Below are positions 1-47,010 of a DNA stretch of 61,252 bases, piece by piece (position 1 is the first letter of the stretch; each line of letters begins with the position of its first letter). The notes beneath the pieces were generated by a model. That model ran no database searches, had not been told where the DNA came from, and saw only the letters and a list, made by a program, of their open reading frames with translations. Origin of the DNA: Chiloscyllium plagiosum (lineage: Eukaryota); NCBI RefSeq assembly GCF_004010195.1, contig NC_057726.1, positions 68,917,155-68,978,406 of the forward strand. The letters are read 5' to 3'. Position numbers and translations under genes: made by a program.

Positions 1-58
1 ACCATCACCACGATCCCCAAAATCAAACGGAAGATGTTAATGGTGTGGAACCGGCCAG
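1..58 (-). CDS. Gene A transmembrane exon (truncated by window edge), activating-type TM with Arg: (A)GRFHTINIFRLILGIVVM...
   Basis: Acceptor ...tatccttcag ending at 59, then phase-1 exon CT GGC CGG TTC CAC ACC ATT AAC ATC TTC CGT TTG ATT TTG GGG ATC GTG GTG ATG. N-x-x-R precedes the hydrophobic run. A homologous exon occurs at 37298-37198. Confidence 0.85.
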
Positions 59-930
59 CTGAAGGATAGAGATTCAATGAGGAAATATAGAGAAACTATT
101 AGACGCAGAATGTTTGTGTGTATGTCTTTACATAAAGGGAGGGAGAACAACAGAGAGGGAACTGGAGACAACCAATGTGTTAGACACAGAACTGTGCGCT
201 TGAGAGTTTACTACAATGCAGCTGAGGGGTAGTACTAAAATGCCCAGAACCTTTCTCCATGAGTTCCGCGGAGTTTACACTGAACATTGTATACATCAGG
301 GAACCTCAAGAATATTCTCCCCTTGGTCTTTTATTGGATCTGGTCTCTGACACTGCTAAACGGGAGCTAAAGCTAATTCTCATCCTCGCGTTAATTTCTA
401 ATGCAGTGCTCGATGGTAACAATACCCAGTCAACGGAAAAGAGGAAGCTGGCATTTACATAGCGCCGTTCAGGCCCCTTGAAAGCCAATGAGCTACTCGA
501 AGTGTGCTCGCCGCTGTAATAAAGAAAATGTGACGACCATTTTGTATACGATTTCCCAAAAAGCAATGTGAGAGTGAGCAGATCATTTGATTCTGTCGTG
601 TGGATTGGCAGGATAAATATTCGCTTAGGACTGATTTATTATCATTAGGGATGGAACCGCGTGTCAGACAGGGGAACTGGGTATTGATCTGCTAATCCCG
701 AACATGGCGCGGATTGAATGCAGTTTGTGGTCATTTTAAGCTGACGGCTAAGCAATACTTTAAAATATTGGCGTCAAGTTTGATTTCGGCTGGAGTCCCG
801 AGTGTGCGGGAATGAATCGGACCCTTGTATTTTTAATGTTGAAGATTAGTGTAGACAGAAATCCCGTCGCTGGTTCCAGTATATAACAAAGATCGTGATT
901 AAATCAATACTGAAGACCCGTCGCCCTTAC

Positions 931-1212
931 CGTGGTTTGGAACCGTGTAGCTGATATTTGCCGGGACGCCGAGTGCGACGTGAGAAACCTGGCAGGTATA
1001 GACTGAGCCCCTCTCCGGAAGACTGAGCTCGCTGGAAACTTGAAATAAACCCTCTTCGTTTAGGATTTTCCTGATGCTGATGCCAGACGTGATTTCGGAG
1101 AAATTTTTATACCACACGAGTTCAAACTGCCCCGGGAAGAAGCCAGCTGTTGTGCAGAGGAGAGCGAGGAAGGGCGAGTCGAGGCGGGTTATCTTCAGCG
1201 GGGTTGGTGGCA
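931..1212 (-). CDS. Gene A Ig C1-set domain exon
   Basis: 282 nt, ttccag| acceptor and G|gtaagg donor, phase 1/1. Translation VPPTPLKI...LLCTTAGFFPGQFELVWYKN...GLFQVSSELSL...VYTCQVSHVAL has C1-set hallmarks (Cys-x3-GFFP, W, YTCxVxH). Confidence 0.93.
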
Positions 1213-1879
1213 CTGGAACACAATAACATTCAATAAATCAATATCGGAAGTTGTGTGTGGGTTGGACAGAAGACAGAACAGCCTGTCAAAAGGCACAGGC
1301 ATTTCTTGAATTTTGGAGGGAATTCTTTTTTTTAAATCAACCTATTAATGCTAACAACTAAAGTTTCAATTTTGAAAGTTAGAATCGATGTACGTTCGTT
1401 AAACCTCCCCGTCCTTTGCATTCGGATAAAAAGTGGAGATAAATAGAGTGGACCATGTCAGAATGGGCAGCCGCTGATAATGTTGGACGAGACACATACT
1501 CTACACACGCAGCTCGGAGTCTGCATTGGATTAACAGTGGTCAAATCAGACAAAGTCAGAGTCCATACTAAAAAAAAGCGGTTTCATCAGACACCCTCGG
1601 TCTGTTGTCCTTTGAACAATCACTGGTTCAATCGGACACAGGCAATCCAGAGTCTATTAAATGCTTACTTCTTTTCCACGAGACATTCTCAATCCATAGT
1701 TTGTATTGAATTCTAATTGGTCCCATCTAAGTCTCAAACCCAAGTCCAAGTCCAATGAGATGCTCCGCAGAGACGGGACTTTCTCAGGGACACTATCCAT
1801 GGCACTGCACACAAGGCCGTTGAGAAGAAACAGGGAAGACACAAGACTGGTTGGAAGCGAGCTCAAGTAATCTCACCGC

Positions 1880-2520
1880 TGTCAAGGAGGCAAAACGTGT
1901 TGCGCCACTCCACCCAGGCAACACTTTCTGCACTAAGGACACCAAGACACAAGTGTAATGTGCACCCATAATGTTGCAAAGAAAGGAGTTTCAGGATTTT
2001 GATCCAGAGACACTATAATAGGAATGGTGTTATATTTACAAGTCAGGGTGGTGACAGGCTTGGAAGGGAAGTTGTATATGGTCGTGTTGCCATCTATCTG
2101 CTGCTGTGGGGTTTGAAGGTGCTGTCGACGAATATTGGGTGAATTCCTTTACTGCGTCTTGGAGAAGGCACACACTGATGTGACCGGACATGTTCATATG
2201 TAAAACGAAATCCAGGATTGTCACAGAGCGGTCATGGAGGGAATGGTGATGCATGTGGTGCCAACGAAATAGGCTGCATTGCCTGAATGCATTGTCAAGC
2301 TTCTTGGGTGTTGGTGCAGCTACATTTAATTCGGCAAATGGCTCGTCTTCGATCATATTGTCGACATGTGCTTGATAAATGGTGGATAGGATTTGGGGAG
2401 TCAGGAGGTGGATCACACATTGTTGGATTCCTGGCCTTCCATTTGCACTTGTAGATATTGTATTTGCATGGTTAGTCCAGTTCAGGGCCTCGGCAACCCC
2501 CAGGATGATAATGTCTTGTA
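1880..2520 (-). mobile_element. Old degenerate LINE remnant in the gene A V-C1 intron
   Basis: Minus-strand ORF 2036-2416 has decayed RT C-terminal-like text (IYQAHV..NMIE..P.A..NVAAPT..KKLD). Boundaries approximate. Confidence 0.45.
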
Positions 2521-2845
2521 AAATAAATGAAAAGGCATTTTTCTCGGAAATATTTCGCTGGAGTTGTAAGCAGTCTTTCAGCTATAAACGATAGCTAACT
2601 AAGTCAGCTATTAGCAATGTCATCGGCTAAATTCCAAGTAGAAGTTCAACGATTAGAGATTTTCACAAAATGCTTCCCTTGACTGTTAAAGTTATATGCG
2701 AAATGAATTTGCACTTTTTTTTCCTTTACTGAGAATTAAAAACCCTATATCCTTCAGTTGATTATTTCTAATGAACTTGTCCTTGAAACTATTTGGTCCA
2801 TCTTCTTCTCAATCATTAGTTCCCGATTGACACTCAAACACGCTC

Positions 2846-3993
2846 ATAGAGATGTACATCATGGGAAAAGACCCTTCGGTCCAACTCGTACATGCCGATC
2901 AGATATCATAACCTAATCTAGTCCCATTTATCAGAAGTTGGCCCATATCCATTCAAACCCTTCCTATTCAATTACACATCCAAATGATTTTTAAATGCTG
3001 TAATTGTCCCAGCCTCCACCACTTCCTCTGGCAGCTCATTCCATACACGTACCACTCTCTGCGTGAAAAAGTTGCCCCGTAGGTCCCGTGAAAATGTTTC
3101 CCCCTCACCCTAAATCTATGCCCTCTAGTTCTGTACTCTCCCATCCCAGAGAACAGACCTTGTCTATCTATCCTATCCATGCGCCTCATGATTTTATAAA
3201 TCTCGATAAGGTCACCCATCAGCCTCCAACACTCCGGGGAAAACAACACTATTCAGCCTCTCCCTGTAGATCAAATGCTCCAACCCTGGCGACAGCCTTG
3301 TAAAGTTTCTGAACTCCGTCAAGTATCCCGGCATCATTCTGAGAGGAGGGAGACCAGAACTGCACACACTATTCCAAAAGTGACCTTACCAATGTTCTGT
3401 ACAGCCACAATATAACCTCCCAACTCTTATAGTCAATGCACTGACCAATAAAGGAAAACATACCAAAGAACTTGTTCACTATCCTGTCTACTTGCGACTC
3501 CACTTTCAACTAACTATGAAACTCCACTCCAAGATCTCTTTGATCGTCAACACTCCGTGCATAAGTCCAACCCTGATTTGCCTTTCCAAAATGCAGAACC
3601 TCGCATTTATGTAAATTAAACTCCTTCTGTCACTCCTCAGCCCATTGACCCATCTGATCAATATCTCGTTGTTCTCTGAGTTAATCTTCTTCACTGACCA
3701 CTACGCCTTCAATTTTGGTGCCATCTGCAAACTTACTAACGAGACCACCTATGTTCACATCCAAATCATTTATATAAGTGACAAAAGTCAGTGGGCCCAG
3801 CACCGATCCTTGTGGCACACCATTGGTCACAGGCCTACAGTCTGAAAGGCAAACCTGCACGATCACCCTCTGTCTTCTATCTTCAAGGTGGTTCTGTATC
3901 CAAATGGCTAGTTCTTGCCGAATTCCGTGCGATCTTGCTAACCCGTCTACCCTGAGGAACCTTGTCGAACGCTTTACTGAAGTCCATGGAGAT
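2846..3993 (-). mobile_element. CR1/HER1-type LINE, 5'-truncated
   Basis: Minus-strand fragments MDFSKAFDKVP, GVPQGSVLGP, SKFADGTKI, GDLIEIYKIMR, RTRGHRFRVRG, followed by a typical 3' UTR. Confidence 0.9.
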
Positions 3994-5218
3994 CCTTTGG
4001 AAAAATATGTTGGCTTCCCAGCCGCGAACGCTTTGTTCACGCAATGTGAATTGAAACAACAGGCGATCTTTGCACACACTTCTCAGGATTGCGTTTAATC
4101 ATTTTCCCATCGAATCTTTGCTCCATGCTTCAAAACCACATTTTCAATTAACAATATCCTGTTGCAATCCCACTCAACATCGGGTATGGATGATGCCATT
4201 ATCCACTTCAAAGGTAGAGTTCCTTTACATTTGAAGTTGGTGCGCAGACTTGAGAAAGTGCCTCCAGCACCCAGCCATGCTTCAGGAACAAAAAAACTGC
4301 AGACTCCAAATATATTTCCATTATTCTACCTTAATGTACGTAGACTGATTGCACCAAGCTAACGAGGTAAAGTGCTCAGAGAATTTTACCCTGCTTCATA
4401 AAATCAGGACTTAAGGGGAGACTCAGTCTATGAGGAATGTAAATAATTACCAAACGTTACAAGTAAAATTGGGGATTAAGAAAAATAAATTTAATCTCCA
4501 AGTACTCAGTAAACATCTCATCAAAATCATACTTGGAAGCAGCGCAAGTACATTTCTCGTTATAATGTCATTTTAGAAGCAGACCAAATAACACTCTCTA
4601 CTTCTCAGTTAAATGTTGAGAGCACTTAAAAGTATTCAAGTATCCAATCCGTTAGCGTGAGGAAGCACAACATTTCTGAGACACCATTTAATAATTCGTT
4701 CTCCGGTAGCATACATTTGAATGTTTTCCTAAAGCCCGTTCTTCTTTTGGAGGATAATTATTTAACTCTCGGTTTAATTACTCATACCGTGCTGTAGCTG
4801 CATCCGTTTATGATCACTTGCACCTATTTGATAATCGATTTTGAGAACCTGACATTTACCTCTTTAAAAGAAAAACACATCTTTCCACGTTGAACTCCAT
4901 GACAAATCCAATGCATTGCATTTCCGATGGCTACCTAAATCAAGTGGTGCATAATTTAGGATACATTATCTGCTTTTAAATAGTCGATATAAAACAAGAT
5001 TAAATACATTACACGGCCTGGCTAACTTTGATTGACCGCGGACGGCAAGTCTGATGTACACCAGCACAAGTTCGGTCTAAGTGTCCTTGAACTGAAAAAA
5101 AAACCAAGCCCGCCTTTCGACACCAAACTATTAGCAGACTCCTTGCTGCTCTTGTGATCTATTATCGAGGTATACCTGCCTAATTTAACGTTGTTCATTT
5201 CTCCTCAGTGACACTCAC

Positions 5219-5539
5219 CGTGTACGATAAGCTTAGTCCCATTCCCATTGAAAGTCTTCCTGCCGAAGACGCTGATGCTACAGTAATAGATTCCGGAGTC
5301 CCGGAAGCTCACATTCAACAGATGGAACTCAGCAGATGCTTGCTTGAACGGTAACATTATTTTCCTTTCGTCTGCTGTTGGGTCCAAAGTTTTGGTCTGC
5401 CCGTCTTTCCGCCAAGAGACATCCACCGATAATTTGCGATCGAAAAGCGGGATGGAGCAATACATTGACACATTTGCACCTTCCACTGCAGTCAGGCACG
5501 CAGGGATTTGCGTCACAGGCAAAGGGGTTTTGCCAGTAT
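5219..5539 (-). CDS. Gene A Ig V-set exon with germline-joined J-like segment
   Basis: 321 nt, tttctggtag| acceptor and G|gtgagt donor, phase 1/1. Translation DTGKTPLPVTQIP...EGANVSMYC...VSWRK...DSGIYYC...NGNGTKLIVH shows C, W, DxGxYYC and a GxGTxLxV G-strand. Confidence 0.93.
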
Positions 5540-5732
5540 CTACCAGAAATATACACAAACATTAGTTGGTCATGTTTCATGTCCTGAAAAAGGAAAAGAG
5601 GTAAAATAATGGGTAAGAAATTTAACGAAAGAAAATCAAATAATTAATCATGAAAACGACGCTGCCTGTTTTGAGTTCCCGGTATTTCCATTCATATTCC
5701 TATCCGCTAGGTGAGTGACAATATTTATAGAC

Positions 5733-5787
5733 CTGTATAAATGATTCCCAGGGCTGAGAGATAGCACATCATATGGAACACAGGCAT
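5733..5787 (-). CDS. Gene A leader (signal peptide) exon MPVFHMMCYLSALGIIYT
   Basis: ATG at 5787, 55 nt, phase-1 donor ACAG|gtct, 193-bp intron to V. Same length, position and YLS..GIIY motif as the paralogous leader at 47010-46956. Confidence 0.82.
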
Positions 5788-6800
5788 CTTGGGCAGGGAA
5801 GATCTCGAGCAGGAAGACAGCAACAGCCAGCGAAAATCGGTGGAAAAAGTGTAACCATCTGGGACTCCCTGGTGCATTCAGGCATCGACTCTGTGTCTGA
5901 GACAACCTCAATGAATTGGTTCTGTTTAAGGCGGATCGACGGAAGTAGGTGTTGCAAGATGAGGATGGCTCAGGTCTGATTGGTGACCAAGAGAATTTGA
6001 AATATTTTCGCATGACGTGAAAGGTTTCTAGTTGAGACAACACTTGTCTGAGTTCAGTGTTGTCCGACCTGTGGCAGTTGGGAGCGCGGTGGAGATCTGG
6101 CCCAGAGGTGGTGATCAAATAGAAATGCATGCCCTGATCTTACAGTTGGACCGGATGCCATGTCCTTGAATGACTTTGTTGAGGGAAAACAGGGAGAAAG
6201 GAGTGGTCAATGGTCAATGGTTTGTGTTTATGGCCCAGTAGAGCCACGTAGGTGCAGTAAAACCACCCAGTCCGGGAGAATCTGATACAATGACTAGATA
6301 AGGTGGATGAAAATGAATGGAGCCTATCGATTTCAACTGCACAGTTGAGGGCAGGTGGAGATGAAAGATGTGATGGTATTCTCTGTTAAAATCCCGAAGA
6401 GGTGATGGGAGCCGACTTGGAAGGGATTCAATGGTCAACAGAACATTTGTGAATTTCTTTATTTTGATTTATTCAAATTTCAAAGTTTATTCTTGATTTA
6501 TTCAAACTCACTTCTGATTAATGAAGTTTCAGCATAAAATTGTTGCAAACATGCTCATAGTTTTGGAAAGTGCGAAGAATATTGCATTCAGAGATACTTC
6601 CAAGTAAGGAGGAGTCAATGAACAGGCTCTGAGATAAGTTTTGAATGTTGAACAAGGGAGTTGTGTTTGGGGTGAAGACGTCACTGAGGATGATATAATA
6701 TAAATCAAATTGGTTGGAGGAATGAAAGTTGAATAATGAGTTATTTGTGATTATTAAGGTTGAAAGAGCAGGAAAAAAAAGGGTGGAATGATTTTGGAAA

Positions 6801-7092
6801 GACCATGTGAGCTGGGAGAGGTAAAGGCAGGAAAGAATCCAGTGACAAATCCAAACAGGAGAAACACTGAGGACGCTGCAGGATATGTTTGAATTTCTTT
6901 CCCAGAGGACACAAGTATGCAAGATTTTGCATATTTTTGACAACAAGACCATGTGAGCTGGGAGAGGTAAAGGCAGGAAAGAATCCAGTGACAAATCCAA
7001 ACGGGAGAAACACTGAGGACGCTGCAGTATATGTTTGAATTTCTTTCCCAGAGGACACAAGTATGCAAGATTTTGCATATTTTTGACAACAA
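6801..7092. repeat. Tandem duplication, 2 x 146 bp
   Basis: gaccatgtgagctggg...tttttgacaacaa at 6801-6946 and again at 6947-7092, two substitutions. Confidence 0.95.
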
Positions 7093-7593
7093 CAACTATA
7101 CCAGCCTTTCTTCTCCAATTTGTTTTTCAGATTAAACTTCAGTTTCACCATCTGTCGTGGTGTAGGTGAACATGCGTGATTGCTAACCCCATGACACACC
7201 ATTATGGCACTTGCGCCAAATCTTACATGCAAAACGTTTAAATTAAATGCAGCAGATTTATTCAAACTCATAACTGATACTGTTCACCTCCTTCTGTTCG
7301 ACACCTGTTTGATTTAACCAAGCTATGCCAACGGTAAAAGCCGCGTGAAAGCCACTTTACTAATGAATGCAAAAAAAAGTTGGAATTGAAAGACTGATAT
7401 GATGTTCTTGTAACACGGTGATTGTTATTTTCAAAAAAACATTTCTTTACGTACAAACTCCAGTACAGCCCCAATTTTTTTCCTTTTTTTAAAATCATGT
7501 TCACAAATCTGCATGACTTGACTACGCCTTGGTATGTTCTCTATCGCCACAGAGGCGCTTTCAGTATTAATTATTAAGGGCACTCTTCTACTA

Positions 7594-7897
7594 GTGGCAC
7601 AGTGGTTAGTACTGCTGCCTCACAGCGCCTGAGACCCGGGTTCAATTCCCGCCTCAGGCGACTGACTGTGTGGAGTTTGCACATTCTCCCCGTGTCTGCG
7701 TGGGTTTCCTCCGGGTGCTCCGGTTTCCTCCCATAATCCAAAGATGTGCAGGTCAGGTGAATTGACCATGTTAAATTGCCCGTAGTGTAAGGTAAGGGGT
7801 AAATGTAGGGGTCTGGGTGGGTTGCGCTTCGGCGGGTCGGCGTGGACTTGTTGGGCCGAAGGGCCTGTTTCCACACTGTAATGTAATCTAATCTAAT
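7594..7897 (+). mobile_element. HE1-like tRNA-derived V-SINE, young copy
   Basis: A box tggcacagtgg, B box ggttcaattcc, V-domain tgtgtggagtttgcacattctccccgtgtctgcgtggg, tail ...ctaatctaat. Confidence 0.92.
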
Positions 7898-8539
7898 ATT
7901 TACCCTACCTTTTTGAAAACCTTTTAACACGGTAGCATTGGTTACCAGCGCTGATTGGTTGTTCTGTCTCAGCAATGTTATATACTCCAACTCAAGTTGG
8001 CTCAGGTATTTATTACATCATTCTTGATCTGTTGTAGTTTAAAGAATGACGAGCAATACTGTCCATGAAGAACGATTGATACTCATTCTGGAACCTCTGG
8101 TGATGGGATTACATCATCAGTTCAGATGTGGCCATGTTAGGAATATATGGCTCTGGGTGATCCATGCCTCAATGTAAGGTGATGAGATCGGATGTTGCAC
8201 ATACAGGGTGATGACGTTTTTTTTCTGTATGTAGAGATGGTGGCTTACGTGGATGAATGTACAGTGCAACACTCAAAATGTGGATTGTAGTGTGATGGGA
8301 AGTCATTTCCAAAATTTTATGTTCAGTTGTGTTATAAATAAATGATCCCCCTTTTTTGATGCCACAATTCTGCGACTGGCTGGTAGGGCGATGACGTCCA
8401 CTTCAGGATGAGCGCAGTCTGGAGGCGACCAGGGCAGGGATATAGAGTGATGAGTCTATTCTTTGCCATGAGCAGTGATGCTGGATCCATATCAGCACTC
8501 GAGGCTGCTGGAGTAAATTTCATGAAGACAAGGCGACAT

Positions 8540-10660
8540 GCTGCTCTCTGTAACTGACTCCCGTGATATGTGCTACATGAATGATTTTATTTGCAGATTT
8601 TGCCCATTTCAAATTGAGTTCAACAATTACCTTCAGCAAACCATGGAGTGGAGAATCAGCGATGGTAATGCATTGAATTTCAAAGGCCAGTTGTTAGATT
8701 CTATCTTATTGGAGATGGTCATTTTCCAGTAGTTGAGTGGCGGATTTGTTACTTGCCAGTAGTCAGGCCAGGACTGGATGCCATCAATATTTTGTTACAT
8801 TTGGACGTGGACTGATTCAGTATCTGAGAAATGGTCGGTGGAGCTGAACTTTGCACAAACATCAGCAGTTATTCATTATTCTGACATCAGGATGAGGGAA
8901 AGATGACTGACTCCTGATCAGCTTCACGATCTTTCATTGTGTGAGGTAAGACTTCAATGAGCAGGGAGCTTTCACCTCGTTTCTAATTGGGTTTATTTTA
9001 CTGGGACTCCTTACAATGGCTCAGTGCTGACCTTCTCCCAAGAGTAGTTACTTTCACCCCCTCTCTGGACTTTAGCTTTTTCTGTGTTTGAAAGGAAGGC
9101 TGTAATGAGGGCAGGATCTGTGTGGCCCTGGCGGAGCCTAAAGTGGGCGTCACTGAGCAGTTTATCAGTGAGCAAGCGCTACTTCACTGTTGATGATATC
9201 TTCCAACACTTTATTGGTGAAGGGCTGGTGACATGGAAAGTTATTTCAAATGGTTTGTAAAGGTTTGTAATACCTTTTGCGTGCATGGGCATACCGCAGA
9301 TGCTTTCCCACATTTTCACAAAGATACCAGTGTTCCAGTCGTCGGGGATCAGTTTGGCTTAGGTTGGGACAACGTCTCATTAGATTAGATTAGATTCCCT
9401 ACAGTGTGGAAAGAGGCCCTTCGACCCAACCAGTCCTCACCGACCCTCTGAAGAGTAACCCACCCAGACCCATTCACACTCTGACTAATGCACCTAACAC
9501 TATGGTCAATTTAGCATGGCCAATTCACCTGACTTGCACATCGTTGGACTGTGGGAGGAGACCGGAGCACCCGGAGGAAATCCACACAGACACAGGGAGA
9601 ATGTGCAAACTCCACACAGTCAGTCGCCCGAGGCTGGAATCGAACCTGGGACCCTGGTGCTGTGAGAACACAACTCTTCAGTATTATTGCCGGAAAGGTG
9701 TCAGGTCCCATAGTCTTTGTAGGACCTAGTCCATTGAAACGTTTCTTGACATCACATCGAGTGATATTTTAGTTGGCATTTACGATGCTGGGAAGTACTT
9801 GAGGATATCAAGATGGTTCATCGACATGTTCCTTTTTCTGAAGATTGTTATATATTGCTAAGCCTTTTCTTTTTCGCGGATTTACTGTGCTTCCTATTCA
9901 TTGAGTTTGGGGTGTTTGTGGAGCTTCCACCACCAATTACTTGGTTAATATCAACCATTATTTATGACTGGTGGTGACAGGATTGCAGAGCTTGATGTGA
10001 TGCCTTTGTTGTGGAGTCCTCTCTTCGAATTGATGTGTATGCTGCCTGACATGCAATTTGCCCTGTTTTGTAGCTTTGTCATGTTTTTATCCCATATTTA
10101 GGTATTCCTGGTGCTGCTCTTGGCATTTCTTCCTGCATATTCTTTGAAACTGCGTTTGATTCCCTGGCTTGATAGTGTTGATAGAGTGGCGAATATGCTG
10201 TGCCATACCTTGCAGATTGGTATGAATATAATTCGATTGTTGTCGATGGCCCACAACACCTCATGGACACCGTGCTTTCAGTTATTATACCTGTTCCAAA
10301 TCTACCTCATTTAGTACGATTGTGGTTCCACACGACACGACGGTGTGGATGCTCACTCAAAGACGTGACTTCATATTCTCCAGAACAGTCAGTGGTCACT
10401 CGTATGGATACAGTTATGGTCAGATGTATCTGCGACCGTCAGGTTGTTGAAGCTGAGGACAGTTTTGTTCCCTCTTTTTTGGCCCACTGCCTTCGCAAAC
10501 GCCAGTTAACCACCTTTTGTACTTGGCCAGCCTGGATAGTACTTGGACTGCCGACCCCTCATGATAATAGACATTGAATTTACTCGCCCAAGGTACACCC
10601 AGCACTCTTGACCCAGTCACTGCTTTCTCCAAGTGCTCATCAACAGGGATTCTTGTTGAC
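8540..10660 (-). mobile_element. Degenerate LINE remnants, interrupted by a SINE
   Basis: Decayed endonuclease/RT-like text on the minus strand (e.g. VLGVPWASKFNVYYHEG..., LVFVKMWESI-like). No intact ORF; family and ends uncertain. Confidence 0.4.
9379..9667 (-). mobile_element. HE1-like V-SINE
   Basis: Reverse complement of the SINE at 7594, with an attagattagattag tail. Confidence 0.9.
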
Positions 10661-11137
10661 TAATCTTTACCGGCTTGCATGACGTCCCTGTTGTCGCAGC
10701 ATCAGGTCTGTCATTAAGTTTTAACCTGGTTCAGAATCAGTGAAATTAAATTGTTAATCTTGTTTAGTCTCATCGCTTCTGATCAATCGTGAGGCATCGT
10801 CAACAACATTGGGACAGAGTGCTTTTGTAACATTTGTTTATGATATTTCAGCATCGACTACTCATGTGGCTGATCAAATTCTTGAGTCTGCTTATAATGC
10901 TGAATAATGAAGGGTAGTTAGCGCACTGTAATAGCTGTTTTCTTGTCTTCGAGGATCCCTTACTATGTTTAACTGAGCTGGTACTAGACGCCCGGAGAAA
11001 CCTTGTCCTTTTGTCGGCTCCACACTAACATCCCAGAACAGAACAAAGACTATGGAGATCTAAAGTTGGAAATGCTCGAGAAACGCAAAAGGTTTGCCAT
11101 CACTGTTGGAGAGAGAAACAGAGTTCATGTTTCCTGT

Positions 11138-11637
11138 NNNNNNNNNNNNNNNNNNNNNNNNNNNNNNNNNNNNNNNNNNNNNNNNNNNNNNNNNNNNNNN
11201 NNNNNNNNNNNNNNNNNNNNNNNNNNNNNNNNNNNNNNNNNNNNNNNNNNNNNNNNNNNNNNNNNNNNNNNNNNNNNNNNNNNNNNNNNNNNNNNNNNNN
11301 NNNNNNNNNNNNNNNNNNNNNNNNNNNNNNNNNNNNNNNNNNNNNNNNNNNNNNNNNNNNNNNNNNNNNNNNNNNNNNNNNNNNNNNNNNNNNNNNNNNN
11401 NNNNNNNNNNNNNNNNNNNNNNNNNNNNNNNNNNNNNNNNNNNNNNNNNNNNNNNNNNNNNNNNNNNNNNNNNNNNNNNNNNNNNNNNNNNNNNNNNNNN
11501 NNNNNNNNNNNNNNNNNNNNNNNNNNNNNNNNNNNNNNNNNNNNNNNNNNNNNNNNNNNNNNNNNNNNNNNNNNNNNNNNNNNNNNNNNNNNNNNNNNNN
11601 NNNNNNNNNNNNNNNNNNNNNNNNNNNNNNNNNNNNN
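11138..11637. other. Assembly gap (500 N, placeholder size)
   Basis: Run of exactly 500 N. Confidence 1.
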
Positions 11638-12772: not shown

Positions 12773-13054
12773 TGCCGCCAACCCCGCTGAAGATAACCCG
12801 CCAGTACTCGCCCTTCCTCGCTCTCCTCTGCACAACAGCTGGCTTCTTCCCGGGGCAGCTTGAACTCATGTGGTATAAAAATTTCTCCGAAATCACGTCT
12901 GGCATCAACATCAGGAAAATCCTGAACGAAGAGGGTTTATTTCAAGTTTCCAGCGAGCTCAGTCTTCCGGAGAGGGAGTCAGTCTATACCTGCCAGGTTT
13001 CTCACGTCGCACTCAGCGTCCCGGCAAACATCAGCGACAAAATTCCGAATCACG
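12773..13054 (+). CDS. Gene B Ig C1-set domain exon (inverted paralog of 931-1212)
   Basis: 282 nt, ttccag| and G|gtaagg, open frame VPPTPLKITRQYSPFLALLCTTAGFFPG...YTCQVSHVALSVPANISDKIPNH; 18 differences from the gene A C1 exon. Confidence 0.92.
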
Positions 13055-14828: not shown

Positions 14829-14942
14829 GTAACCAAGACCGTACTTTCTCTTACGCCTTAGTCTTTGGTTGTGCTGCAGGCGGGATTATGATTTTAGTTC
14901 TGGGAATTGTCTTAAAGGGGTGCAAATCAGACAGAACAACTG
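14829..14942 (+). CDS. Gene B transmembrane exon, copy 1 (uncharged TM): GNQDRTFSYALVFGCAAGGIMILVLGIVLKGCKSDRTT
   Basis: 114 nt, ccctatag| acceptor, G|gtgaga donor, phase 1/1 matching C1. Hydrophobic span followed by basic residues. Confidence 0.85.
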
Positions 14943-15212: not shown

Positions 15213-15256
15213 GCAACGCGATTGCTGAGGACATGAACAGCCAATTTGAGGAACAG
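15213..15256 (+). CDS. Gene B first cytoplasmic exon, copy 1: GNAIAEDMNSQFEEQ
   Basis: 44 nt, tctctgacag| acceptor, CAG|gtcagt donor, phase 1/0. Confidence 0.7.
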
Positions 15257-16667: not shown

Positions 16668-16781
16668 GTAACCAAGACCGCACTTTCTCCTACGCCTTAG
16701 TCTTTGGTTGTGCTGCAGGCGGGATTATGATTTTAGTTCTGGGAATTGTCTTCAAGAGGTGCAAATTAGACAGAACAACTG
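16668..16781 (+). CDS. Gene B transmembrane exon, copy 2: GNQDRTFSYALVFGCAAGGIMILVLGIVFKRCKLDRTT
   Basis: Same splice sites as copy 1, 5 substitutions. Confidence 0.85.
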
Positions 16782-17051: not shown

Positions 17052-17095
17052 GCAACGCGATTGCTGAGGACATGAACAGCCAATTTGAGGAACAG
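17052..17095 (+). CDS. Gene B first cytoplasmic exon, copy 2
   Basis: Identical to 15213-15256; its phase-0 end fits the next exon. Confidence 0.72.
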
Positions 17096-17784: not shown

Positions 17785-17907
17785 ATCAATCGGGACAGAG
17801 AAGCAGTGAGTCCGATTTATGCTGCTCTCCACTTCAGCGGAGAGATGAAACCTGCAAAACTGCGAACGGAGCAAGAGAGCTTCGTGTATGCGCAGGTACT
17901 GTCATGA
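17785..17907 (+). CDS. Gene B cytoplasmic exon with two tyrosine motifs: INRDREAVSPIYAALHFSGEMKPAKLRTEQESFVYAQVLS*
   Basis: tttctcag| acceptor, phase 0 continuing from cyt1, TGA at 17905-17907. ITIM-like IYAAL and VYAQV. Paralog at 22641. Confidence 0.8.
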   Translation: MNRDREAVSPIYAALHFSGEMKPAKLRTEQESFVYAQVLS

Positions 17908-19131: not shown

Positions 19132-19235
19132 ATCTCACCGCTTCCGAGGAAACTGCAGGAAAACCGAAGGAAAAGCAGGCGGAGTATGCAGAGGTCAAAA
19201 TAAACCAGGGAAGCGGAAACTCCTGGATTCCATGA
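19132..19235 (+). CDS. Gene B second tyrosine-motif terminal exon, 3' part: ..NLTASEETAGKPKEKQAEYAEVKINQGSGNSWIP*
   Basis: Open frame to TGA 19233-19235 with AEYAEV. Colinear with the complete paralogous exon 22882-23032. 5' end lies in the gap. Confidence 0.7.
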
Positions 19236-22640: not shown

Positions 22641-22758
22641 ATCAAACGCGACAGAGGCAGTGAATTCGATTTATGCTGCTCTCAACTTCAGCGAACCGAG
22701 AAAAACCGGGAAACCGTTAATGGAAGAAGAGAGAGTTGTCTCTGCAATTGAAAATTAA
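22641..22758 (+). pseudogene. Relic C: degenerate first ITIM exon (..EAVNSIYAALNFSEPRK..)
   Basis: Homologous to 17785-17907. Weak ccgag acceptor, 2-nt deletion relative to gene B, second Tyr codon is TCT. No upstream V/C1/TM exons. Confidence 0.75.
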
Positions 22759-22881: not shown

Positions 22882-23032
22882 GCAAAGCACCCGGACAGTT
22901 GGTGAACTGACGTATGCCTCTTTGAATCTCACCACTTTCGAGCAAAGGGCAAGACGAAAACAGTGGAAGGAGCAGGCGGAGTATGCAGAAGTCAAGATGT
23001 GCAAGGGAAGCGGAAACCCCTGGATTCCATGA
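22882..23032 (+). pseudogene. Relic C: second ITIM exon QSTRTVGELTYASLNLTTFEQRARRKQWKEQAEYAEVKMCKGSGNPWIP*
   Basis: ttgtttctcacgcag| acceptor; canonical ITIM LTYASL plus AEYAEV; homologous to 19132-19235. Confidence 0.75.
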
Positions 23033-37197: not shown

Positions 37198-37298
37198 TCA
37201 GATATTTCCATTTTCTGTATCAAAGATCCACACAAGAATCACTACCGACCCCAACAGCAAACGGAAAAGATTGTTGGTGTTAAAGCGCTTAATAGAAT
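37198..37298 (-). pseudogene. Gene D transmembrane exon, activating type: DSIKRFNTNNLFRLLLGSVVILVWIFDTENGNI*
   Basis: Clear homology to the gene A TM (RFHTINIFRLILGIVV vs RFNTNNLFRLLLGSVV). Weak ccaagag acceptor; short tail ending in TGA. Confidence 0.75.
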
Positions 37299-40440: not shown

Positions 40441-40715
40441 CTTGAAGCAGATCTGCGCAATTATTGCTGGCTGGGGCCTCAAGTGATACATGAGAAACTT
40501 GGCATGTATAAGTTGACCAGCTATCCATTTGAAGCTGGCAACTTCAAATAAACCCTTCCCCTTTCGTCTTTTCATAGTGTTCATTCCAGATGTAATCTCT
40601 GTGTCATTTTTATATCAAGTGAGGTTGAAGTCTTCAGGCAAGAAGCCAGCTGTTTTGCAGAGGAACGTGAGGGTTGGAGAGGGTAGCCGAGTAATTGTCA
40701 CTGGAGTCGGTGGCA
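40441..40715 (-). pseudogene. Gene D C1-set exon, disabled
   Basis: Splice sites intact (ttcttag|, G|gtaagt), but the invariant Trp is TGA (40617-40615; LT*YKN) and the length is 275 nt (net -7, frameshift before STYTCQVSHVSL). Confidence 0.9.
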
Positions 40716-41001: not shown

Positions 41002-41455
41002 GGGCGGCACAATGGCACAGTGGTTAGCACTGCTGCCTCACAGCGCCAGAGTTCCAGGTTCAATTCCCACCTCAGGCAACTGTCTGTGTGGAGTTTGCGC
41101 ATTCTCCCCGTGTCTGCATGAGTTTCCTCCGAGTGCTCTGGTTTCCTCCCACAATCCAAAAAAAATGTGCAGATTAGGTGAATTGGCCTTGCTAAATTGC
41201 CCATAGTGTTTGGTGAAGGGGTAAGTGTAGGGGAATGGGTCTGGGTGTGTTGTTCTTTGGCGGGTTGGTGTGGACCTGTTGGGCCAAAGTGAGGGGCCTT
41301 TGCCCAAAACGTCGATTTTGCTGCTCCTCGGATGCTGCCTGAACTGCTGTGCTCTTCCAGCACCACTAATCCAAAATCTGGTTTCCAGCATCTGCAGTCA
41401 TTGTTTTTACCTTGTTGGGTCGAAGGGCCTGTTTCCACACTGTAAGTAATCTAAT
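41002..41455 (+). mobile_element. HE1-like V-SINE carrying a nested ~120-bp PLE terminal fragment (~41290-41410)
   Basis: Full SINE head, V-domain and tail. The insert is flanked by a degenerate duplicate of the SINE sequence (tgttgggccaaag / tgttgggtcgaag). Confidence 0.85.
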
Positions 41456-44199: not shown

Positions 44200-44935
44200 A
44201 AGAAAACATCCTATCGGTAAATCTTTGGTAAATGAGAGGTGCTGCATTTTGGAAGGCAAATAGGGCAGGATTTATGCAGTTATTATTAAGGTCCTGGGGT
44301 ATGTTGCTGAACAAAGTGACTTAGGAGTGCAGGTTGTTAGTTCCTTGAAGGTGGAGTCACAGGAAGACAGGATAGCGAAGAAGGCGTTTGGTTTGCTTGC
44401 CTTTATTGGTCAGGGCATTGAGCATCAGACGTGGGAGGTAATGTTGCGGCTGGACGGAACACTGGTTAGCGCACTTTTAGAGTACTGCGTTCAATTCTGA
44501 TCTCTGCTATAGGAAGGATGTAGTGAAACTTGAAAGGATTCAGAAAAGAATTACGAGGATGTTGCCAGTGTTGGACAGTTTGAGGCACAGCGAGAGGCTA
44601 GACAGGCTGGGGTTATTTGCCCTGGAGAGCAAAGGCTGAGAGGTGATATTATAACAGCATGAGGGGCACGGATAGCATCAACACACAATGGCCTTTCCAT
44701 GGTGGGGGAGTCCAAAACTAGAGACCATAAGTTCAAGGTGAGAGGGGAAAGATTTAAAAGAGACGTGAAGGATAACTTTTTCATACATAGGATGGTGTGA
44801 GTATGGAAGGAGCTGCCAGAGGAAGTGGTGGAGGCTGGTACAATGATGACATTTAAAAGGTATCTGGATTGGTATATGAATAGGAAGAGTTTCCATTGAT
44901 CCGGGCCAAATTCTAGCAAATGGGACTAGATTTGT
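44200..44935 (+). mobile_element. CR1-type LINE 3' fragment
   Basis: gctgcattttggaagg, gagtactgcgttcaattct, gagctgccagaggaagtggtggagg. Confidence 0.85.
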
Positions 44936-44941
44936 TTAAAC

Positions 44942-46125
44942 AGAACATAGAACATAGAACAATACAGCACACTTTTAGAGTACTGCGTTCAGAACAGGCC
45001 CTTCGGCCCACGATGTTGTGCCGAACATTTGTCCTAGCTTAAGCACCCATCCGTGTACCTATCCAATTGCTGCTTAAAGGTCGCCAATGATTCTGACTCT
45101 GCCACTCCCACAAGCAGCGCATTCCATGCCCCCACCACTCTCTGGGTAAAGAACCTACCGCTGACATCCCCCCTATACCTTCCAGCCTTCACCTTAAATT
45201 TATGTCCCCTCTGTTGTATCCAGGGAAAAAGTTTCTGACTGTCTACTCTATCTATTCCTCTGATCAGCTCATAAACCTCTATCAAGTCACCCCTCATTCT
45301 TCGCCGTTCCAATGAGAAAAGGCCTAGCACTCTCAATCTATCCTTGTACGACCTATTCTCCATTCCAGGCAATATTCTGGCAAATCTTCTCTGCACCCTC
45401 TCCAAAGCTTCCACATCTTTCCTAACGTGAGGCGACCAAAACTGCACACAGTACTCCAAATGTGGCCTAACCAAGGTCCTGTACAGCTGCAACATCACTT
45501 CACGACTCTTGAATTCAATCCCTCTGCTAATGAATGCTAATACACCATAGGCCTTCTTACAAGCTCTATCCACTTGAGTGGCAACTTTCAAAGATCTATG
45601 AACATAGACCCCAAGATCCCTCTGCTCCTCCACCTTCCTAAGAACCCTACCGTTAACCCTGTATTCCGCATTCTTATTTGTCCTTCCAAAATGGACAACC
45701 TCACACTTAACAGGGTTGAACTCCATCTGCCACTCCTCAGCCCAACTCTGCATCATATCTAAGTCCCTTTGAAGACAACAACAGCCCTCCTCACTATCTA
45801 CAAATCCACCAATCTTCGTATCATCTTCAAATTTACTGACCCACCCTTCGACTCCCTCTTCCAAGTCATTAATAAAAATTACAAACAGCAGAGGACCCAG
45901 AACTGATCCCTGCAGAACTCCACTTGTAACTGTGCTCCAGGCTGAATATTTACTATCTACCACCACTCTCTGGTTTCGACCGGTTAGCCAGTTTTGTATC
46001 CAACTGGCCGAATTTCCCTCTATCCCATGCCTCCTGACTTTCCGCATAAGGCTACCATGGGGAACCTTATCAAATGCCTTACTAAAATCCATGTACACTA
46101 CATCCACTGCTCTACCCACATCCAC
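44942..46125 (-). mobile_element. Young CR1-type LINE, 5'-truncated, with an uninterrupted RT C-terminal frame (45034-46152)
   Basis: VVYMDFSKAFDKVPH, SGVLQGSVLGP, SKFEDDTKI, WQMEFN, RPHLEYCVQFWSP; (agaacat)n tail. Confidence 0.95.
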
Positions 46126-46443
46126 ATCCACATTAGTCCCAAATCTAAACAAATTGTTGTGTCTCTTCTGTCAGTCCATTGTTTCTGAGTGTGCATTCTA
46201 GTGCTGCTAGGAAGTCTGCTGTCTTGGCGTCCCTGTGTTTGTAGCTGAGTCCCTTGGCTAGTATTGTTCCTTCCGTGTCTGTGAGCTGACTGTGGGAGAG
46301 GTTTCTAACCCAGGCATGGATGTGTTGGATCGAAGGGTAAGTTTCATGCTGTACAGGTCTATGAGTCTGTGACTCTATGGTCTTAGCAGCTGCTATTCGC
46401 TGATATGATTTACGTGGTCCATTGTTTCCGCAGTGTCACGCAC

Positions 46444-46758
46444 TGTGAACAATAAGCTCAGTCCCACCACCATTGGAAATCTTTCCTCCCCCTTCAGTAA
46501 TGCTGCAGTAATACACGCAGGAATCTTCGAAACTCACATTCATCAGGTGAAACTCGGAACCTTCTTGCCTGTGTGACATTATCATTTTGTCCTTGGACGG
46601 AGCCAAACTGTTGTCTTGGCCATTTCTTCTCCAAGAGAAGTACCCCTTTGCGCCGGGAAGGAAAAGTGTCACCGAGCAATTCATGGATATATTAGCACCT
46701 TTCAGCGCAGTCACACGACTGGGGAGCTGATGCACTGTCTGATTGTTCACTTCAGTAG
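46444..46758 (-). pseudogene. Gene D V(J)-type exon (frame open; orthologous acceptor mutated)
   Basis: TTEVNNQTVHQLP..KGANISMNC..FSWRR..DSCVYYC..NGGGTELIVH; donor A|gtgcgt. The acceptor position reads ctgtcAA instead of AG. Confidence 0.88.
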
Positions 46759-46955
46759 TTGACAGAAATAAAGTGAAACGGAAATAATGGGCAGAATTAA
46801 TAATGACAAGATATGTTCGAAAGAAAGAAGCAATGCATATGGAACACAACAAAACCACGGAAAACGACAATAAGCGATGGAGGTTAGATCTACATCATTC
46901 CCATTCCTATTTAACAGGCAGGTGTACAAACACAACTCTATAAATATCTGCCTAC

Positions 46956-47010
46956 ATGAGTAAATAATGCCTGACACTGACAGGTACCAGAGTACAGCAG
47001 ATGCAGACAT
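46956..47010 (-). pseudogene. Gene D leader exon MSASAVLWYLSVSGIIYS
   Basis: 55 nt, phase-1 donor T|gtaggc, 197 bp from V; homologous to the gene A leader. Confidence 0.75.

What the first reader, a model, noticed from the sequence alone, without database searches (positions are those of the whole stretch)
1..47010. Cluster of non-rearranging VJ-C1 'antigen-receptor-like' genes forming a paired activating/inhibitory receptor system in a shark
Seen: four related loci. A (minus, intact L-V-C1-TM) and D (minus, pseudogene L-V-C1-TM) have TMs with N-x-x-R. B (plus) has an uncharged TM and tyrosine-motif tail exons. C retains only ITIM exons. The reconstructed L-V-C1-TM(-cyt1-tail) splice phases of A and B fit. 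Established: a V domain with a J-like G strand plus a C1-set domain is the Ig light chain/TCR ectodomain plan, shared with few non-rearranging molecules such as SIRPs and tapasin/B7-H6-type proteins. Paired receptor families (KIR, LILR, SIRP, NITR) combine near-identical ectodomains with either a charged TM or ITIMs. Inference: this is an NK/myeloid-type paired receptor family built on a germline-joined VJ-C1 scaffold, relevant to the origin of rearranging receptors. Most TM, leader and tail exons are invisible in the ORF track. I cannot tell whether this exact family is already described; non-rearranging V-C1 genes are known from cartilaginous fish in general.
Basis: partly seen in the sequence, partly recalled or inferred. 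Interest (0 to 1): 0.93.

Follow-up and report, generated by a model that had tools for sequence, protein, structure and literature searches.

The report
Shark paired VJ-C1 immune receptor cluster
This bamboo-shark window holds a small cluster of antibody-like but non-rearranging receptor genes, one built to activate and one to inhibit immune cells, belonging to a large family so far seen almost only in sharks, rays and chimaeras.

Summary
The window (Chiloscyllium plagiosum) carries four related loci. A (minus) is an intact leader, V(J), C1 and Arg-bearing TM gene. B (plus) has C1, an uncharged TM, and tyrosine-motif tail exons. C is two frame-damaged tail exons. D (minus) is a pseudogene of type A.

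Caveats:
- B has no visible leader or V exon.
- B's TM and cyt1 exons are tandemly duplicated.
- B's last exon is cut by gap 2.

Relatives were found almost only in cartilaginous fish (56 of 59 rows), under inconsistent automatic names: SIRP-alpha-like, tapasin-related-like, NCR3LG1-like, Ig-lambda-like.

On trees, activating forms are scattered among inhibitory ones: V 7 changes for 8 activating rows, C1 6 for 7. Their TM regions form one group. This is the pattern expected of paired receptors.

No transcript evidence was obtained. The family meets neither the SIRP nor the NKp30 definition as tested. I found no paper describing it, but key papers and all supplements were not readable.

The scan noted similar genes elsewhere in this genome.

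Verdict: a real, new variant of a known kind, of moderate to high interest.

The parts
5733..5787 (-). Locus A leader exon (MPVFHMMCYLSALGIIYT, phase-1 donor G|GT)
   Evidence: Read. tblastn match to the leader of P0181.
5219..5539 (-). Locus A V exon with a germline-joined J-like G strand (..NGNGTKLIVH), phase 1 to 1
   Evidence: Read. Pfam V-set E 3.7e-9. Aligned with NKp30 GNGTRLVV. 100% identical to public model P0002. No CACAGTG inside it.
931..1212 (-). Locus A C1-set exon (..YTCQVSH..), phase 1 to 1
   Evidence: Read. Pfam C1-set E 3.6e-11. PDB sequence matches to IgA CH, MHC II beta and UrIg2.
1..58 (-). Locus A TM exon, first part (A)GRFHTINIFRLILGIVVM.., with Arg in an N-x-x-R context. 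It runs off the window start.
   Evidence: Read. Public model P0002 continues ..VLGTAFIVDHLK.
12773..13054 (+). Locus B C1-set exon, 89.2% identical to A's in protein
   Evidence: Public model P0208 starts inside it.
14829..14942 (+). Locus B uncharged TM exon, copy 1 (GNQDRTFSYALVFGCAAGGIMILVLGIVLKGCKSDRTT)
   Evidence: Lies in the tandem repeat 13465-15300 / 15300-17139, 95.5% identical.
15213..15256 (+). Locus B cyt1 exon, copy 1 (GNAIAEDMNSQFEEQ)
   Evidence: tblastn. Position derived from the 1839-nt repeat offset.
16668..16781 (+). Locus B uncharged TM exon, copy 2, phase 1 to 1
   Evidence: Read..
17052..17095 (+). Locus B cyt1 exon, copy 2, phase 1 to 0
   Evidence: Read..
17785..17895 (+). 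Locus B tail exon 1 (INRDREAVSPIYAALHFSGEMKPAKLRTEQESFVYAQ), phase 0, donor GT at 17896
   Evidence: Read. Same junctions in public model P0208 and in orthologue P0205.
19132..19235 (+). Visible 3' part of locus B's last exon (..LTASEETAGKPKEKQAEYAEVKINQGSGNSWIP, stop 19233-19235). Its 5' part lies in gap 2.
22641..22752 (+). Locus C relic of tail exon 1. It has a 2-nt deletion after the acceptor, has lost the second Tyr, and has no donor.
   Evidence: Read. tblastn.
22882..23032 (+). Locus C relic of tail exon 2 (..GELTYASLNL..AEYAEVKMCKGSGNPWIP, stop). One extra base after the acceptor shifts the frame.
   Evidence: 82.6% identical to 19132-19265.
46956..47010 (-). Locus D leader exon (MSASAVLWYLSVSGIIYS), 55 nt as in A
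46444..46749 (-). Locus D V exon (..NGGGTELIVH), open, 49.5% identical to A's V
40441..40715 (-). Locus D C1 exon, disabled by TGA at 40617-40615 at the conserved Trp. It is 7 nt shorter than A's exon, which is a frameshift.
37198..37298 (-). Locus D TM exon (SIKRFNTNNLFRLLLGSVVILVWIFDTENGNI, stop), with N-x-x-R and a short tail

Best explanation
The window holds part of a cluster of a cartilaginous-fish multigene family of non-rearranging cell-surface receptors. The ectodomain is one antigen-receptor-like V domain (V and J-like strand in one exon, behind a split leader) plus one C1-set domain.

The family comes in two signalling forms that share ectodomains.
- Type B has an uncharged, Gly/Cys-rich TM and a long tail with up to four Y-A-x-(L/V/I)-type tyrosine motifs. 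I infer that these recruit SH2 phosphatases and dampen the cell.
- Type A has a TM with a conserved Arg (N-x-x-R in this species), an acidic-His end (IVDHLK), and almost no tail. I infer that it pairs through the Arg with an ITAM adaptor of the FcR-gamma kind and activates the cell.

A and B lie head to head, so a similar ligand would give opposite signals. C and D are decayed copies, as expected of birth-and-death evolution.

Shown: the exons, phases, domain types, the similarity between forms, and the family-wide mosaic of ectodomains and TM types. Inferred: expression, adaptor, phosphatase recruitment, ligand and cell type.
For: - Exon anatomy and phases.
- Domain types: V-set and C1-set above Pfam cut-offs.
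- Public gene models use the same junctions. P0002 is locus A and P0208 is locus B. The Hemiscyllium orthologue P0205 shows the full C1-TM-cyt-four-tyrosine tail.
- A and B C1 exons are 89.2% identical over 93 aa.
- A's V is 91% identical over 105 columns to the V of P0181, an inhibitory-type model of the same species on another contig.
- Family range: 56 of 59 rows at E<=1e-5 name cartilaginous fishes. 27 of 30 looked-up best hits to A's V are chondrichthyan.
- Activating-type TMs occur in five genera: Chiloscyllium, Heptranchias, Scyliorhinus, Carcharodon and Heterodontus.
- Trees: V tree, 36 rows, 8 activating, 7 changes of TM type. C1 tree, 38 rows, 7 activating, 6 changes.
- TM-region tree: 38 rows, 8 activating, 1 change, one clade at 93/89.
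Against: - No transcript evidence. Runs X1-X3 cover introns and exons alike and their contigs cross exon borders, so they look like DNA. None of the 15 joints shown lies at an exon junction (51 more were not shown). The single-cell RNA run X6 laid 0 reads from about 6% of the run.
- B lacks a visible leader and V. Its TM exon is duplicated in frame, so the public model has two TMs. If both are spliced in, the protein may be non-functional.
- The tyrosine motifs visible in B are not canonical ITIMs at position -2.
- N-x-x-R is present in only 3 of 8 activating-type TMs (listing). Only the Arg is general.
- The TM tree rests on 36 columns and is partly circular, because the types were defined from the TM and tail themselves.
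- A search with the tail of P0009 found only family members (5 hits). Tail homology to SIRP-alpha is therefore unsupported.
Confidence: 0.7

Rival explanations
1. These are the cartilaginous-fish NKp30 (NCR3) genes, already known in outline. In this reading NKp30 kept a C1 domain in sharks and expanded, and its partners would be B7H6-like ligands.
For: - The best solved-structure match of A's V exon by single-sequence search is NKp30 (E 7.4e-6). The G strand GNGTKLIV aligns with GNGTRLVV.
- NCBI names a V-only isoform of a sawfish family member 'NCR3-like'.
- TM Arg as in NKp30 (recalled).
- Flajnik et al. 2012 is cited for NKp30/B7H6 co-evolution. I saw only its title in reference lists. Its abstract, as I recall it, says NKp30 and B7H6 gene numbers correlate from sharks to mammals.
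- An earlier scan note reports a VJ-C1 receptor next to a B7-family gene on another piece of this genome (untested).
Against: - A V-only profile of 12 family sequences does not bring NKp30 into the best 60 solved chains. CD79b, TCR and VNAR V domains score higher among single V domains.
- NKp30 is described as a VJ gene without a C domain, and as MHC-linked (passages). Here a C1 exon is present.
- The MHC-like notes of this scan lie on other pieces (untested).
- The E-value gap to TCR V-alpha is small (7e-6 against 3e-5).
Confidence: 0.25
2. They are orthologues of the SIRP family (SIRP-alpha, beta, gamma) that lost or never gained the third domain.
For: - NCBI names many members 'tyrosine-protein phosphatase non-receptor type substrate 1-like' or 'SIRP-beta-1-like'.
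- Language-model neighbours of P0009 are SIRP-alpha clusters (0.96).
- SIRP-alpha (2wng) aligns in one stretch over V plus the first C1 (E 1.3e-25).
- The paired design and a four-tyrosine Y-A-x-(L/I/V) tail resemble SIRP-alpha (the SIRP motifs are recalled).
Against: - One C1 domain, not two.
- The activating form has Arg with N-x-x-R, not the Lys of SIRP-beta (recalled).
- SIRP V domains are not among the best 60 matches of A's V.
- IgA heavy chain and UrIg2 score higher than SIRP-alpha with the whole profile.
- The tail search found no SIRP (a search of low reach).
- No synteny data.
Confidence: 0.15
3. They are B7-family (B7H6-like) ligands rather than receptors.
For: - NCBI names several members 'natural cytotoxicity triggering receptor 3 ligand 1-like' or 'CD276 homolog'.
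- CD276 is among the profile matches (E 9.4e-24).
- The C1 exons give weak hits to the CD80-like and BTN3-like C-domain models, below cut-off.
Against: - The C1 exon passes the C1-set cut-off and fails those of the B7-type C models.
- The V has an antigen-receptor-like G strand.
- Members carry either a charged TM with no tail or multi-tyrosine tails. That is receptor wiring.
Confidence: 0.07
4. The cluster in this window is decaying and silent. A is an unexpressed recent pseudogene-to-be, and B is broken by the TM duplication and a missing V.
For: - Two of the four loci (C, D) are clearly dead.
- B shows no V in the window and has a duplicated TM exon.
- No RNA support was obtained.
- The locus is riddled with LINE fragments.
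Against: - All four exons of A are open with consensus splice sites.
- B's seven visible exons are open.
- The Hemiscyllium orthologue of B keeps the same exons.
- Assembly gaps, not mutations, hide B's missing parts.
Confidence: 0.12

Closest known systems
SIRP family (SIRP-alpha, beta, gamma), mammalian paired receptors
   Same: - Non-rearranging V with a J-like strand, followed by C1-set domain(s).
- Paired inhibitory (multi-tyrosine tail) and activating (charged TM, short tail) members with near-identical ectodomains.
- SIRP-alpha aligns over V plus C1 in one stretch.
- Automatic names and language-model neighbours point here.
   Different: - One C1 domain instead of two.
- Arg / N-x-x-R TM rather than Lys (recalled).
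- No detectable tail homology in the one search run.
- Orthology and CD47 binding are untested.
- Relatives were found almost only in cartilaginous fishes.
NKp30 (NCR3)
   Same: - VJ-type V domain. It is the best single-sequence match among solved structures and has the same GNGT.L.V G strand.
- Arg in the TM of the activating form (recalled for NKp30).
   Different: - NKp30 is a V-only receptor, described as MHC-linked (passages). Here there is a C1 exon and both ITIM-type and Arg-type members.
- The profile search does not single out NKp30.
UrIg and UrIg2, non-rearranging shark VJ-C1 genes (PMC12227049, PMC10751288; abstract and passages read)
   Same: - Elasmobranch non-rearranging VJ exon with a split leader, followed by C1-type domain(s).
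- UrIg2 is the second-best chain for the family profile (E 7.8e-32) and the third-best for A's C1 exon.
   Different: [quoted passage not shown] The genes here have one C1, a TM, and immune-receptor signalling modules. They form a large multigene family.
LRC-type FcR-gamma-coupled receptors (activating LILR, NCR1, GPVI, Fc-alpha-R, OSCAR; Xenopus FCRL and SLAM members)
   Same: TM with N-x-x-R near its outer end and a very short tail. The motif is described in PMC4536121 as promoting FcR-gamma association.
   Different: - Those ectodomains are not V plus C1.
- Only 3 of the 8 activating-type TMs of this family that I collected keep the Asn.
- Association with any adaptor is untested.
PRARP (Fu et al. 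2019), non-rearranging VJ(-C1) genes with an ITIM in bony vertebrates
   Same: As I recall the abstract, they have a VJ domain, a C1 domain in non-avian orthologues, and an ITIM tail. PRARP is named beside NKp30 as an MHC-linked VJ gene in PMC10751288.
   Different: Not tested. The paper is not held and no PRARP sequence was available as a record. The nearest non-chondrichthyan hits were a coelacanth V-only ITIM protein (P0098) and two teleost Ig-like proteins.

Membership tests
Paired activating/inhibitory IgSF receptors (functional class) | Closely linked genes with near-identical ectodomains | tested here: met
   A and B lie head to head about 7 kb apart. Their C1 exons are 89.2% identical over 93 aa. 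B's V is not visible. A's V is 91% identical to that of the inhibitory-type model P0181 of the same species.
Paired activating/inhibitory IgSF receptors (functional class) | One member with cytoplasmic ITIM(s), (S/I/V/L)xYxx(I/V/L) | tested here: inconclusive
   B's visible motifs are PIYAAL, FVYAQV and AEYAEV, which are non-canonical at position -2. The canonical LTYASL is seen in relic C and in orthologue P0205. B's own copy would fall in gap 2.
Paired activating/inhibitory IgSF receptors (functional class) | Other member with a charged TM residue and a short tail | tested here: met
   A has ..HTINIFRLILG... D has ..NNLFRLLLG.. with a stop 9 codons after the TM. The same Arg is present in all 8 activating-type TMs listed.
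Paired activating/inhibitory IgSF receptors (functional class) | Physical association with an ITAM adaptor, and SHP recruitment | not testable with these tools
   Needs co-expression and pull-down experiments.
SIRP family | V domain followed by two C1-set domains | tested here: not met
   There is one C1 exon between V and TM in A and D. The public models P0002, P0009 and P0181 have one C1.
SIRP family | Lys in the TM of the activating member (DAP12 coupling; feature recalled) | tested here: not met
   Arg, with no Lys, in the TM core of A and D.
SIRP family | Orthology or synteny with the SIRP locus, and CD47 binding | not testable with these tools
No vertebrate genome collection is on hand.
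NKp30 (NCR3) | Single VJ-type V domain with no C domain | tested here: not met
   The C1 exon passes the Pfam C1-set cut-off. V-only forms exist only as predicted isoforms in other species (P0010, P0061).
NKp30 (NCR3) | V domain specifically closest to NKp30 | tested here: inconclusive
   Best by single sequence (E 7.4e-6 against 3.2e-5 for TCR V-alpha). Not in the best 60 with the V-only profile.
NKp30 (NCR3) | MHC linkage | not testable with these tools
   This scan's MHC-like notes lie on other pieces of the genome. They are unchecked.
Rearranging antigen receptors (IgL, TCR) | Separate V and J segments flanked by recombination signal sequences | tested here: not met
   V and the J-like strand sit in one exon that ends at a splice donor. 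A's V exon holds no CACAGTG. The 12 heptamers in the window match the chance expectation of 9.8.
UrIg / UrIg2 | VJ followed by several C1-type domains in an antibody-like chain | tested here: not met
   One C1 exon, then the TM. UrIg2 has nine C1-type domains (passage).
LRC-type N-x-x-R TM receptors | N-x-x-R motif in the TM | tested here: met
   NIFR in A and NLFR in D. Family-wide it is present in 3 of 8 activating-type TMs.
PRARP | Orthology to chicken or bony-vertebrate PRARP genes | not tested
   No PRARP sequence or paper was available.

The most novel reading that the evidence does not exclude
This chondrichthyan-wide family is a surviving non-rearranging sister of the antigen-receptor chains. 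It is a VJ-C1-TM chain whose TM basic residue couples to an ITAM adaptor, which is the wiring of a TCR chain without RAG. It is kept alongside ITIM-tailed twins.

Its N-x-x-R / Arg TM exon would then show that the FcR-gamma-coupling module, known as the most conserved element of the leukocyte receptor complex, predates the split between cartilaginous and bony fishes. It would also show that the module moved between unrelated Ig scaffolds by exon shuffling.
Probability: 0.12. Interest if true: 0.85.

Novelty: new variant of a known kind. Interest (0 to 1): 0.58.

Why it matters
Non-rearranging VJ-C1 genes of sharks are currently used to argue how antibodies and T-cell receptors began. PMC12227049 and PMC10751288 present UrIg and UrIg2 that way. 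In the parts I could read, those papers name only UrIg, UrIg2, NCR3 and PRARP.

A large family found across sharks, rays and chimaeras would add a third, membrane-signalling kind of antigen-receptor-like gene. Its members have a VJ-C1 ectodomain and come as activating and inhibitory twins. That would give comparative immunologists candidate innate (NK or myeloid) receptors in a group where few are characterised.

The mosaic seen here is also a clean case of how paired receptors are built. The TM modules are old and type-specific. The ectodomains are repeatedly shared between the two types.

It matters less if the family turns out to be what specialists already file under shark NKp30 or SIRP-like genes. 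The gene models have been public for years.

Tried and rejected
1. Expression. The look-up of sequencing runs on 5200-5800 gave four holders of unknown kind and RNA runs only by species label. Read laying on 1-5800 showed X1-X3 covering introns like exons, which looks like DNA. The single-cell RNA run gave 0 reads. This is no test of splicing.

3. V-only profile against solved structures. The ranking is swamped by multi-Ig proteins and is of no use for family placement. The same bias affects the whole-length profile.

4. Tail homology. A search with P0009 residues 222-342 found only 5 family members. It rests on shared words, so a blank for SIRP means little.

5. Literature. Seven full-text searches found no paper on a shark VJ-C1-TM paired family. 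The following were not held: Flajnik et al. 2012 (PMC3709836), Ohta & Flajnik 2015 (PMC4594805), Flajnik et al. 2023 (PMC10530332), Ohta et al. 2019 and Fu et al. 2019. Supplements were closed. The supplements of PMC3964593 (Note XI), PMC10751288 and PMC12227049 may list these genes or shark NCR3.

6. Rejected as unsupported. B's C1 groups with P0181 and with the Hemiscyllium orthologue P0205 to the exclusion of A (99/94, 100/93).

7. Structure prediction was considered and left out. Pfam and sequence matches settle the domain types, and a fold search cannot separate V-C1 families.

8. Script slips. The regex was too strict (4 rows) and was replaced by an HMM filter. In one search my cut took the V domain of P0067 and dropped 7 rows. 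The tree was redone by HMM columns.
- The V tree left out P0078 and P0195, which were too gappy.
- P0205 was not in the set.
- Rows for the trees were chosen by me from the stored hits and are not exhaustive.

9. An RSS at D's V end. CACAGTG at 46441-46447 overlaps the splice donor and lies after the J-like strand, with no convincing nonamer by eye. I treat it as chance.

Full report
WHAT THE WINDOW IS. The V exon at 5539-5219 is 100% identical to a public protein, XP_043563377.1 (P0002). This is 'uncharacterized protein LOC122558644' of Chiloscyllium plagiosum, on a 73-Mb record. The window is therefore whitespotted bamboo shark. It has three N runs: 11138-11637, 18490-19131 and 26638-27137.

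CHECK OF THE OBSERVATION. I read the claimed exons base by base. I then located every family exon by two methods: tblastn with the exon translations and with public relatives, and an HMM of 12 family proteins run over all six frames with filters off. The window holds two V exons (A and D), three C1 exons (A, B, D), three uncharged or charged TM exon types, and tail exons. Nothing else was found.

Locus A (minus) is intact.
- The leader is 5787-5733, the V(J) exon 5539-5219 and the C1 exon 1212-931. The TM exon runs from 58 off the window edge.
- The leader intron is 193 nt, which is the 'split leader' of V genes.

Locus D (minus) has the same plan, with leader 47010-46956, V 46749-46444 and TM 37298-37198. 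Its C1 exon (40715-40441) is disabled. It carries TGA where the conserved Trp codon should be, and it is 7 nt shorter than A's.

Locus B (plus) has these visible exons.
- The C1 exon is at 12773-13054.
- An uncharged TM exon and a short cyt1 exon are each present twice, because of a 1.84-kb tandem repeat (13465-15300 against 15300-17139, 95.5%).
- A tail exon lies at 17785-17895, and the end of a last exon at 19132-19235.

Locus C is two tail-exon relics at 22641-about 22752 and 22882-23032. Each has a frame-breaking indel just after its acceptor. The first has also lost its donor and its second tyrosine.

Pfam gives V-set for the V exons and C1-set for the C1 exons, above the curated cut-offs.

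THE GAPS.
- Gap 1. The inverted A/B homology (903-1748 against 13083-12254 at 83.8%, and 1961-2107 against 11784-11638) runs into its right edge. Its left flank matches nothing in A. B's leader and V exons are nowhere in 5800-12772. Whether they lie in the gap is unknown. I did not look them up elsewhere.
- Gap 2. It cuts B's last exon. The letters right after the gap are already coding and align with residues 199-231 of the Hemiscyllium orthologue P0205. The acceptor and the part that carries LTYASL in the orthologue and in relic C are not readable.
- Gap 3. It lies between two copies of one LINE family. Their reverse-transcriptase coordinates overlap (14-305 on the right, 213-366 on the left). 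The two sides are not one continuous element. No receptor exon is near.

RELATIVES.
- A's V exon found 227 proteins at E<=0.001 among 1.84 billion representatives.
- Of the 30 best-hit proteins whose names I looked up, 27 are from cartilaginous fishes. The other three are a coelacanth V-only ITIM protein and two teleost Ig-like proteins.
- A profile of 12 members found 59 proteins at E<=1e-5 among 8000 scored candidates. Of these, 56 rows name a shark, ray or chimaera and one names no species. The last two are a sloth tapasin-related protein (4e-12) and a sunfish Ig-like protein (6.5e-6).
- The automatic names are inconsistent. They include SIRP-alpha-like, SIRP-beta-like, tapasin-related-like, NCR3 ligand 1-like, Ig lambda-like, CD276 homolog, MHC class I-like, and NCR3-like for a V-only isoform.
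- P0205 (Hemiscyllium) shows the complete inhibitory plan: C1, one TM, cyt1 and a tail with four tyrosines (..PIYAAL.., ..FVYAQT.., ..LTYASL.., ..AEYAEV..).
- This scan noted similar VJ-C1-ITIM genes 63 kb and 325 kb beyond the window, 6.7 and 7.4 Mb before it, and on other pieces (unchecked).

PAIRED-RECEPTOR TEST.
- Ectodomain similarity. A and B share 89.2% of C1 residues. A's V is 91% identical to the V of P0181, an inhibitory-type model of the same species on another contig.
- TM types. Arg-bearing TMs with short tails occur in five genera. All 8 I collected share the Arg. Seven share a (D/E/N)-His near the inner end, and 3 have N-x-x-R (listing).
- V tree. It has 36 rows, and the 8 activating-type rows need 7 changes of type.
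- C1 tree. It has 38 rows, and the 7 activating rows need 6 changes.
- Neighbours. Each activating form sits next to an inhibitory one: A with P0181 (100/99), P0182 with P0171/P0176, P0016 with P0175/P0015, P0028 with P0041, and P0074 with P0190/P0178.
- TM-region tree. It has 38 rows and the 8 activating rows form one group with 1 change (93/89, not starred). That tree has only 36 columns and is partly circular, since types were defined from these residues.
- Reading. The TM modules are old and type-specific, while the ectodomains are repeatedly shared. This is the behaviour known from KIR, LILR and SIRP pairs (established knowledge, recalled).
- Age of the A/B split. A lies outside the group formed by B, P0181 and Hemiscyllium P0205. 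The A/B split is therefore older than the two genera. I see no sign of recent conversion of the C1 exon.

HOW IT LIKELY WORKS. What is shown is the domain plan and the signalling modules. The rest is inferred.
- Inhibitory form. I infer that its tail tyrosines recruit SH2 phosphatases.
- Activating form. I infer that the Arg-bearing TM pairs with an ITAM adaptor. The passage in PMC4536121 says N-x-x-R TMs promote FcR-gamma association in several receptor families and species.
- The ligand is unknown.
- Whether the chains dimerise like antigen receptors is unknown. The inhibitory TMs share a Gly/Cys-rich stretch (..GCAAGG..; listing).

WHAT IT IS NOT, AS FAR AS TESTED.
- It does not rearrange. 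V and the J-like strand are in one exon, and there is no heptamer in A's V.
- It is not a SIRP by definition. It has one C1 rather than two, and Arg rather than Lys.
- It is not NKp30 by definition, because a C1 is present. NKp30 is the best solved-structure match for A's V, and the G strands read GNGTKLIV and GNGTRLVV. A V-only profile nevertheless does not single NKp30 out.
- It is not UrIg-like in architecture.
- PRARP could not be tested.

EXPRESSION. No evidence either way.
- The four runs that hold 0.56-0.61 of the words of 5200-5800 are of unknown kind.
- Of the three I laid (X1-X3), all cover introns and exons, and their contigs cross exon borders (for example 5196-5568 and 277-1000).
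- None of the 15 joints shown is at an exon junction. All 15 lie in the LINE-rich stretch 2864-3895, and 51 more were not shown.
- The single-cell RNA run gave 0 reads from about 6% of its letters.
- Depth over the V and C1 exons is 3-8 times that of their flanks, with several alternative letters. This fits further near-identical copies in other individuals' genomes.

NOVELTY. The genes are in public databases as unnamed or misnamed predictions. Seven full-text searches found no paper on such a family. The recent papers on shark non-rearranging VJ genes name UrIg, UrIg2, NCR3 and PRARP only, in the parts I read: the abstract and passages of PMC12227049, and passages of PMC10751288 and PMC11599192. 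The papers most likely to mention it were not held: Flajnik 2012, Ohta & Flajnik 2015, Ohta 2019 and Fu 2019. Supplements were closed. I therefore keep a sizeable chance (about 0.25-0.4 together) that specialists already file these genes under shark NKp30 or SIRP-like.

VERDICT. This is a real feature, correctly seen. I read it as a new variant of the known kind 'paired activating/inhibitory IgSF receptors', built on a VJ plus single-C1 scaffold. Interest is moderate to high.

I searched the window's exons one by one and built no joined model of my own.

Noticed in passing
window 13465-17139: A 1.84-kb tandem duplication (95.5% identical) doubles B's TM and cyt1 exons. Both copies are open. 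The public model P0208 splices both TM exons in frame, which would give two membrane spans. The catshark model P0011 shows a similar doubled TM-tail.
   Followed up: partly
window 2844-4100 (A's V-C1 intron); also 14221-14467, 16067-16307, 26150-26613, 27138-27977, 32139-32414, 34590-35446, 44273-44881, 45034-46152, 50486-51076, 53912-54319, 57714-58724: There are many fragments of one LINE-type reverse transcriptase. The copy at 45034-46152 has a 372-aa open frame. In three whole-genome-like runs, summed contig depth over 2911-3104 reaches about 1.3-2.2 million, so this is a very abundant repeat.
   Followed up: partly
window 46441-46447: D's V exon ends in a perfect CACAGTG heptamer that overlaps the splice donor. 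A has CACGGTG there. It lies after the J-like strand, I see no convincing nonamer, and 12 heptamers in the window match chance (9.8 expected).
   Followed up: yes
window 971-1358 and 5239-5626: In runs X1-X3 the depth over the C1 and V exons is 3-8 times that of the flanking intron, with several alternative letters (for example 1061, 1077, 1117, 1208, 5251, 5255, 5432). This fits more near-identical exon copies in the species than the window shows.
   Followed up: no
protein P0181 (C. plagiosum LOC122546281, on an 8.4-kb contig): This is an inhibitory-type L-V-C1-TM model. Its V is 91% identical to A's V and its C1 is 94% identical to B's C1. It could be an allele, a haplotig or a paralogue of B. 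I did not fetch its DNA.
   Followed up: no
proteins P0010, P0005, P0008, P0056 (V-TM-tail) and P0177, P0191, P0193 (no TM): In other species, NCBI predicts isoforms of family genes that skip the C1 exon (NKp30-like V-only receptors) or skip the TM exon (possibly soluble forms).
   Followed up: no
window 13198-13323, 18323-18489, 41290-41411: These are SINE-like elements sharing the stretch ..GCCCGAAACGTCGATT..GGATGCTGCCTGACCTGCTG... One of them forms the left flank of gap 2. The similarity of 18323-18489 was judged by eye only.
   Followed up: no
TM regions listed: Inhibitory-type TMs across the family share a Gly/Cys-rich start (..SGCAAGG....AGCAGGG..). Activating-type TMs end in (I/V)(V/M)(D/E/N)H. 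Neither motif is explained.
   Followed up: no
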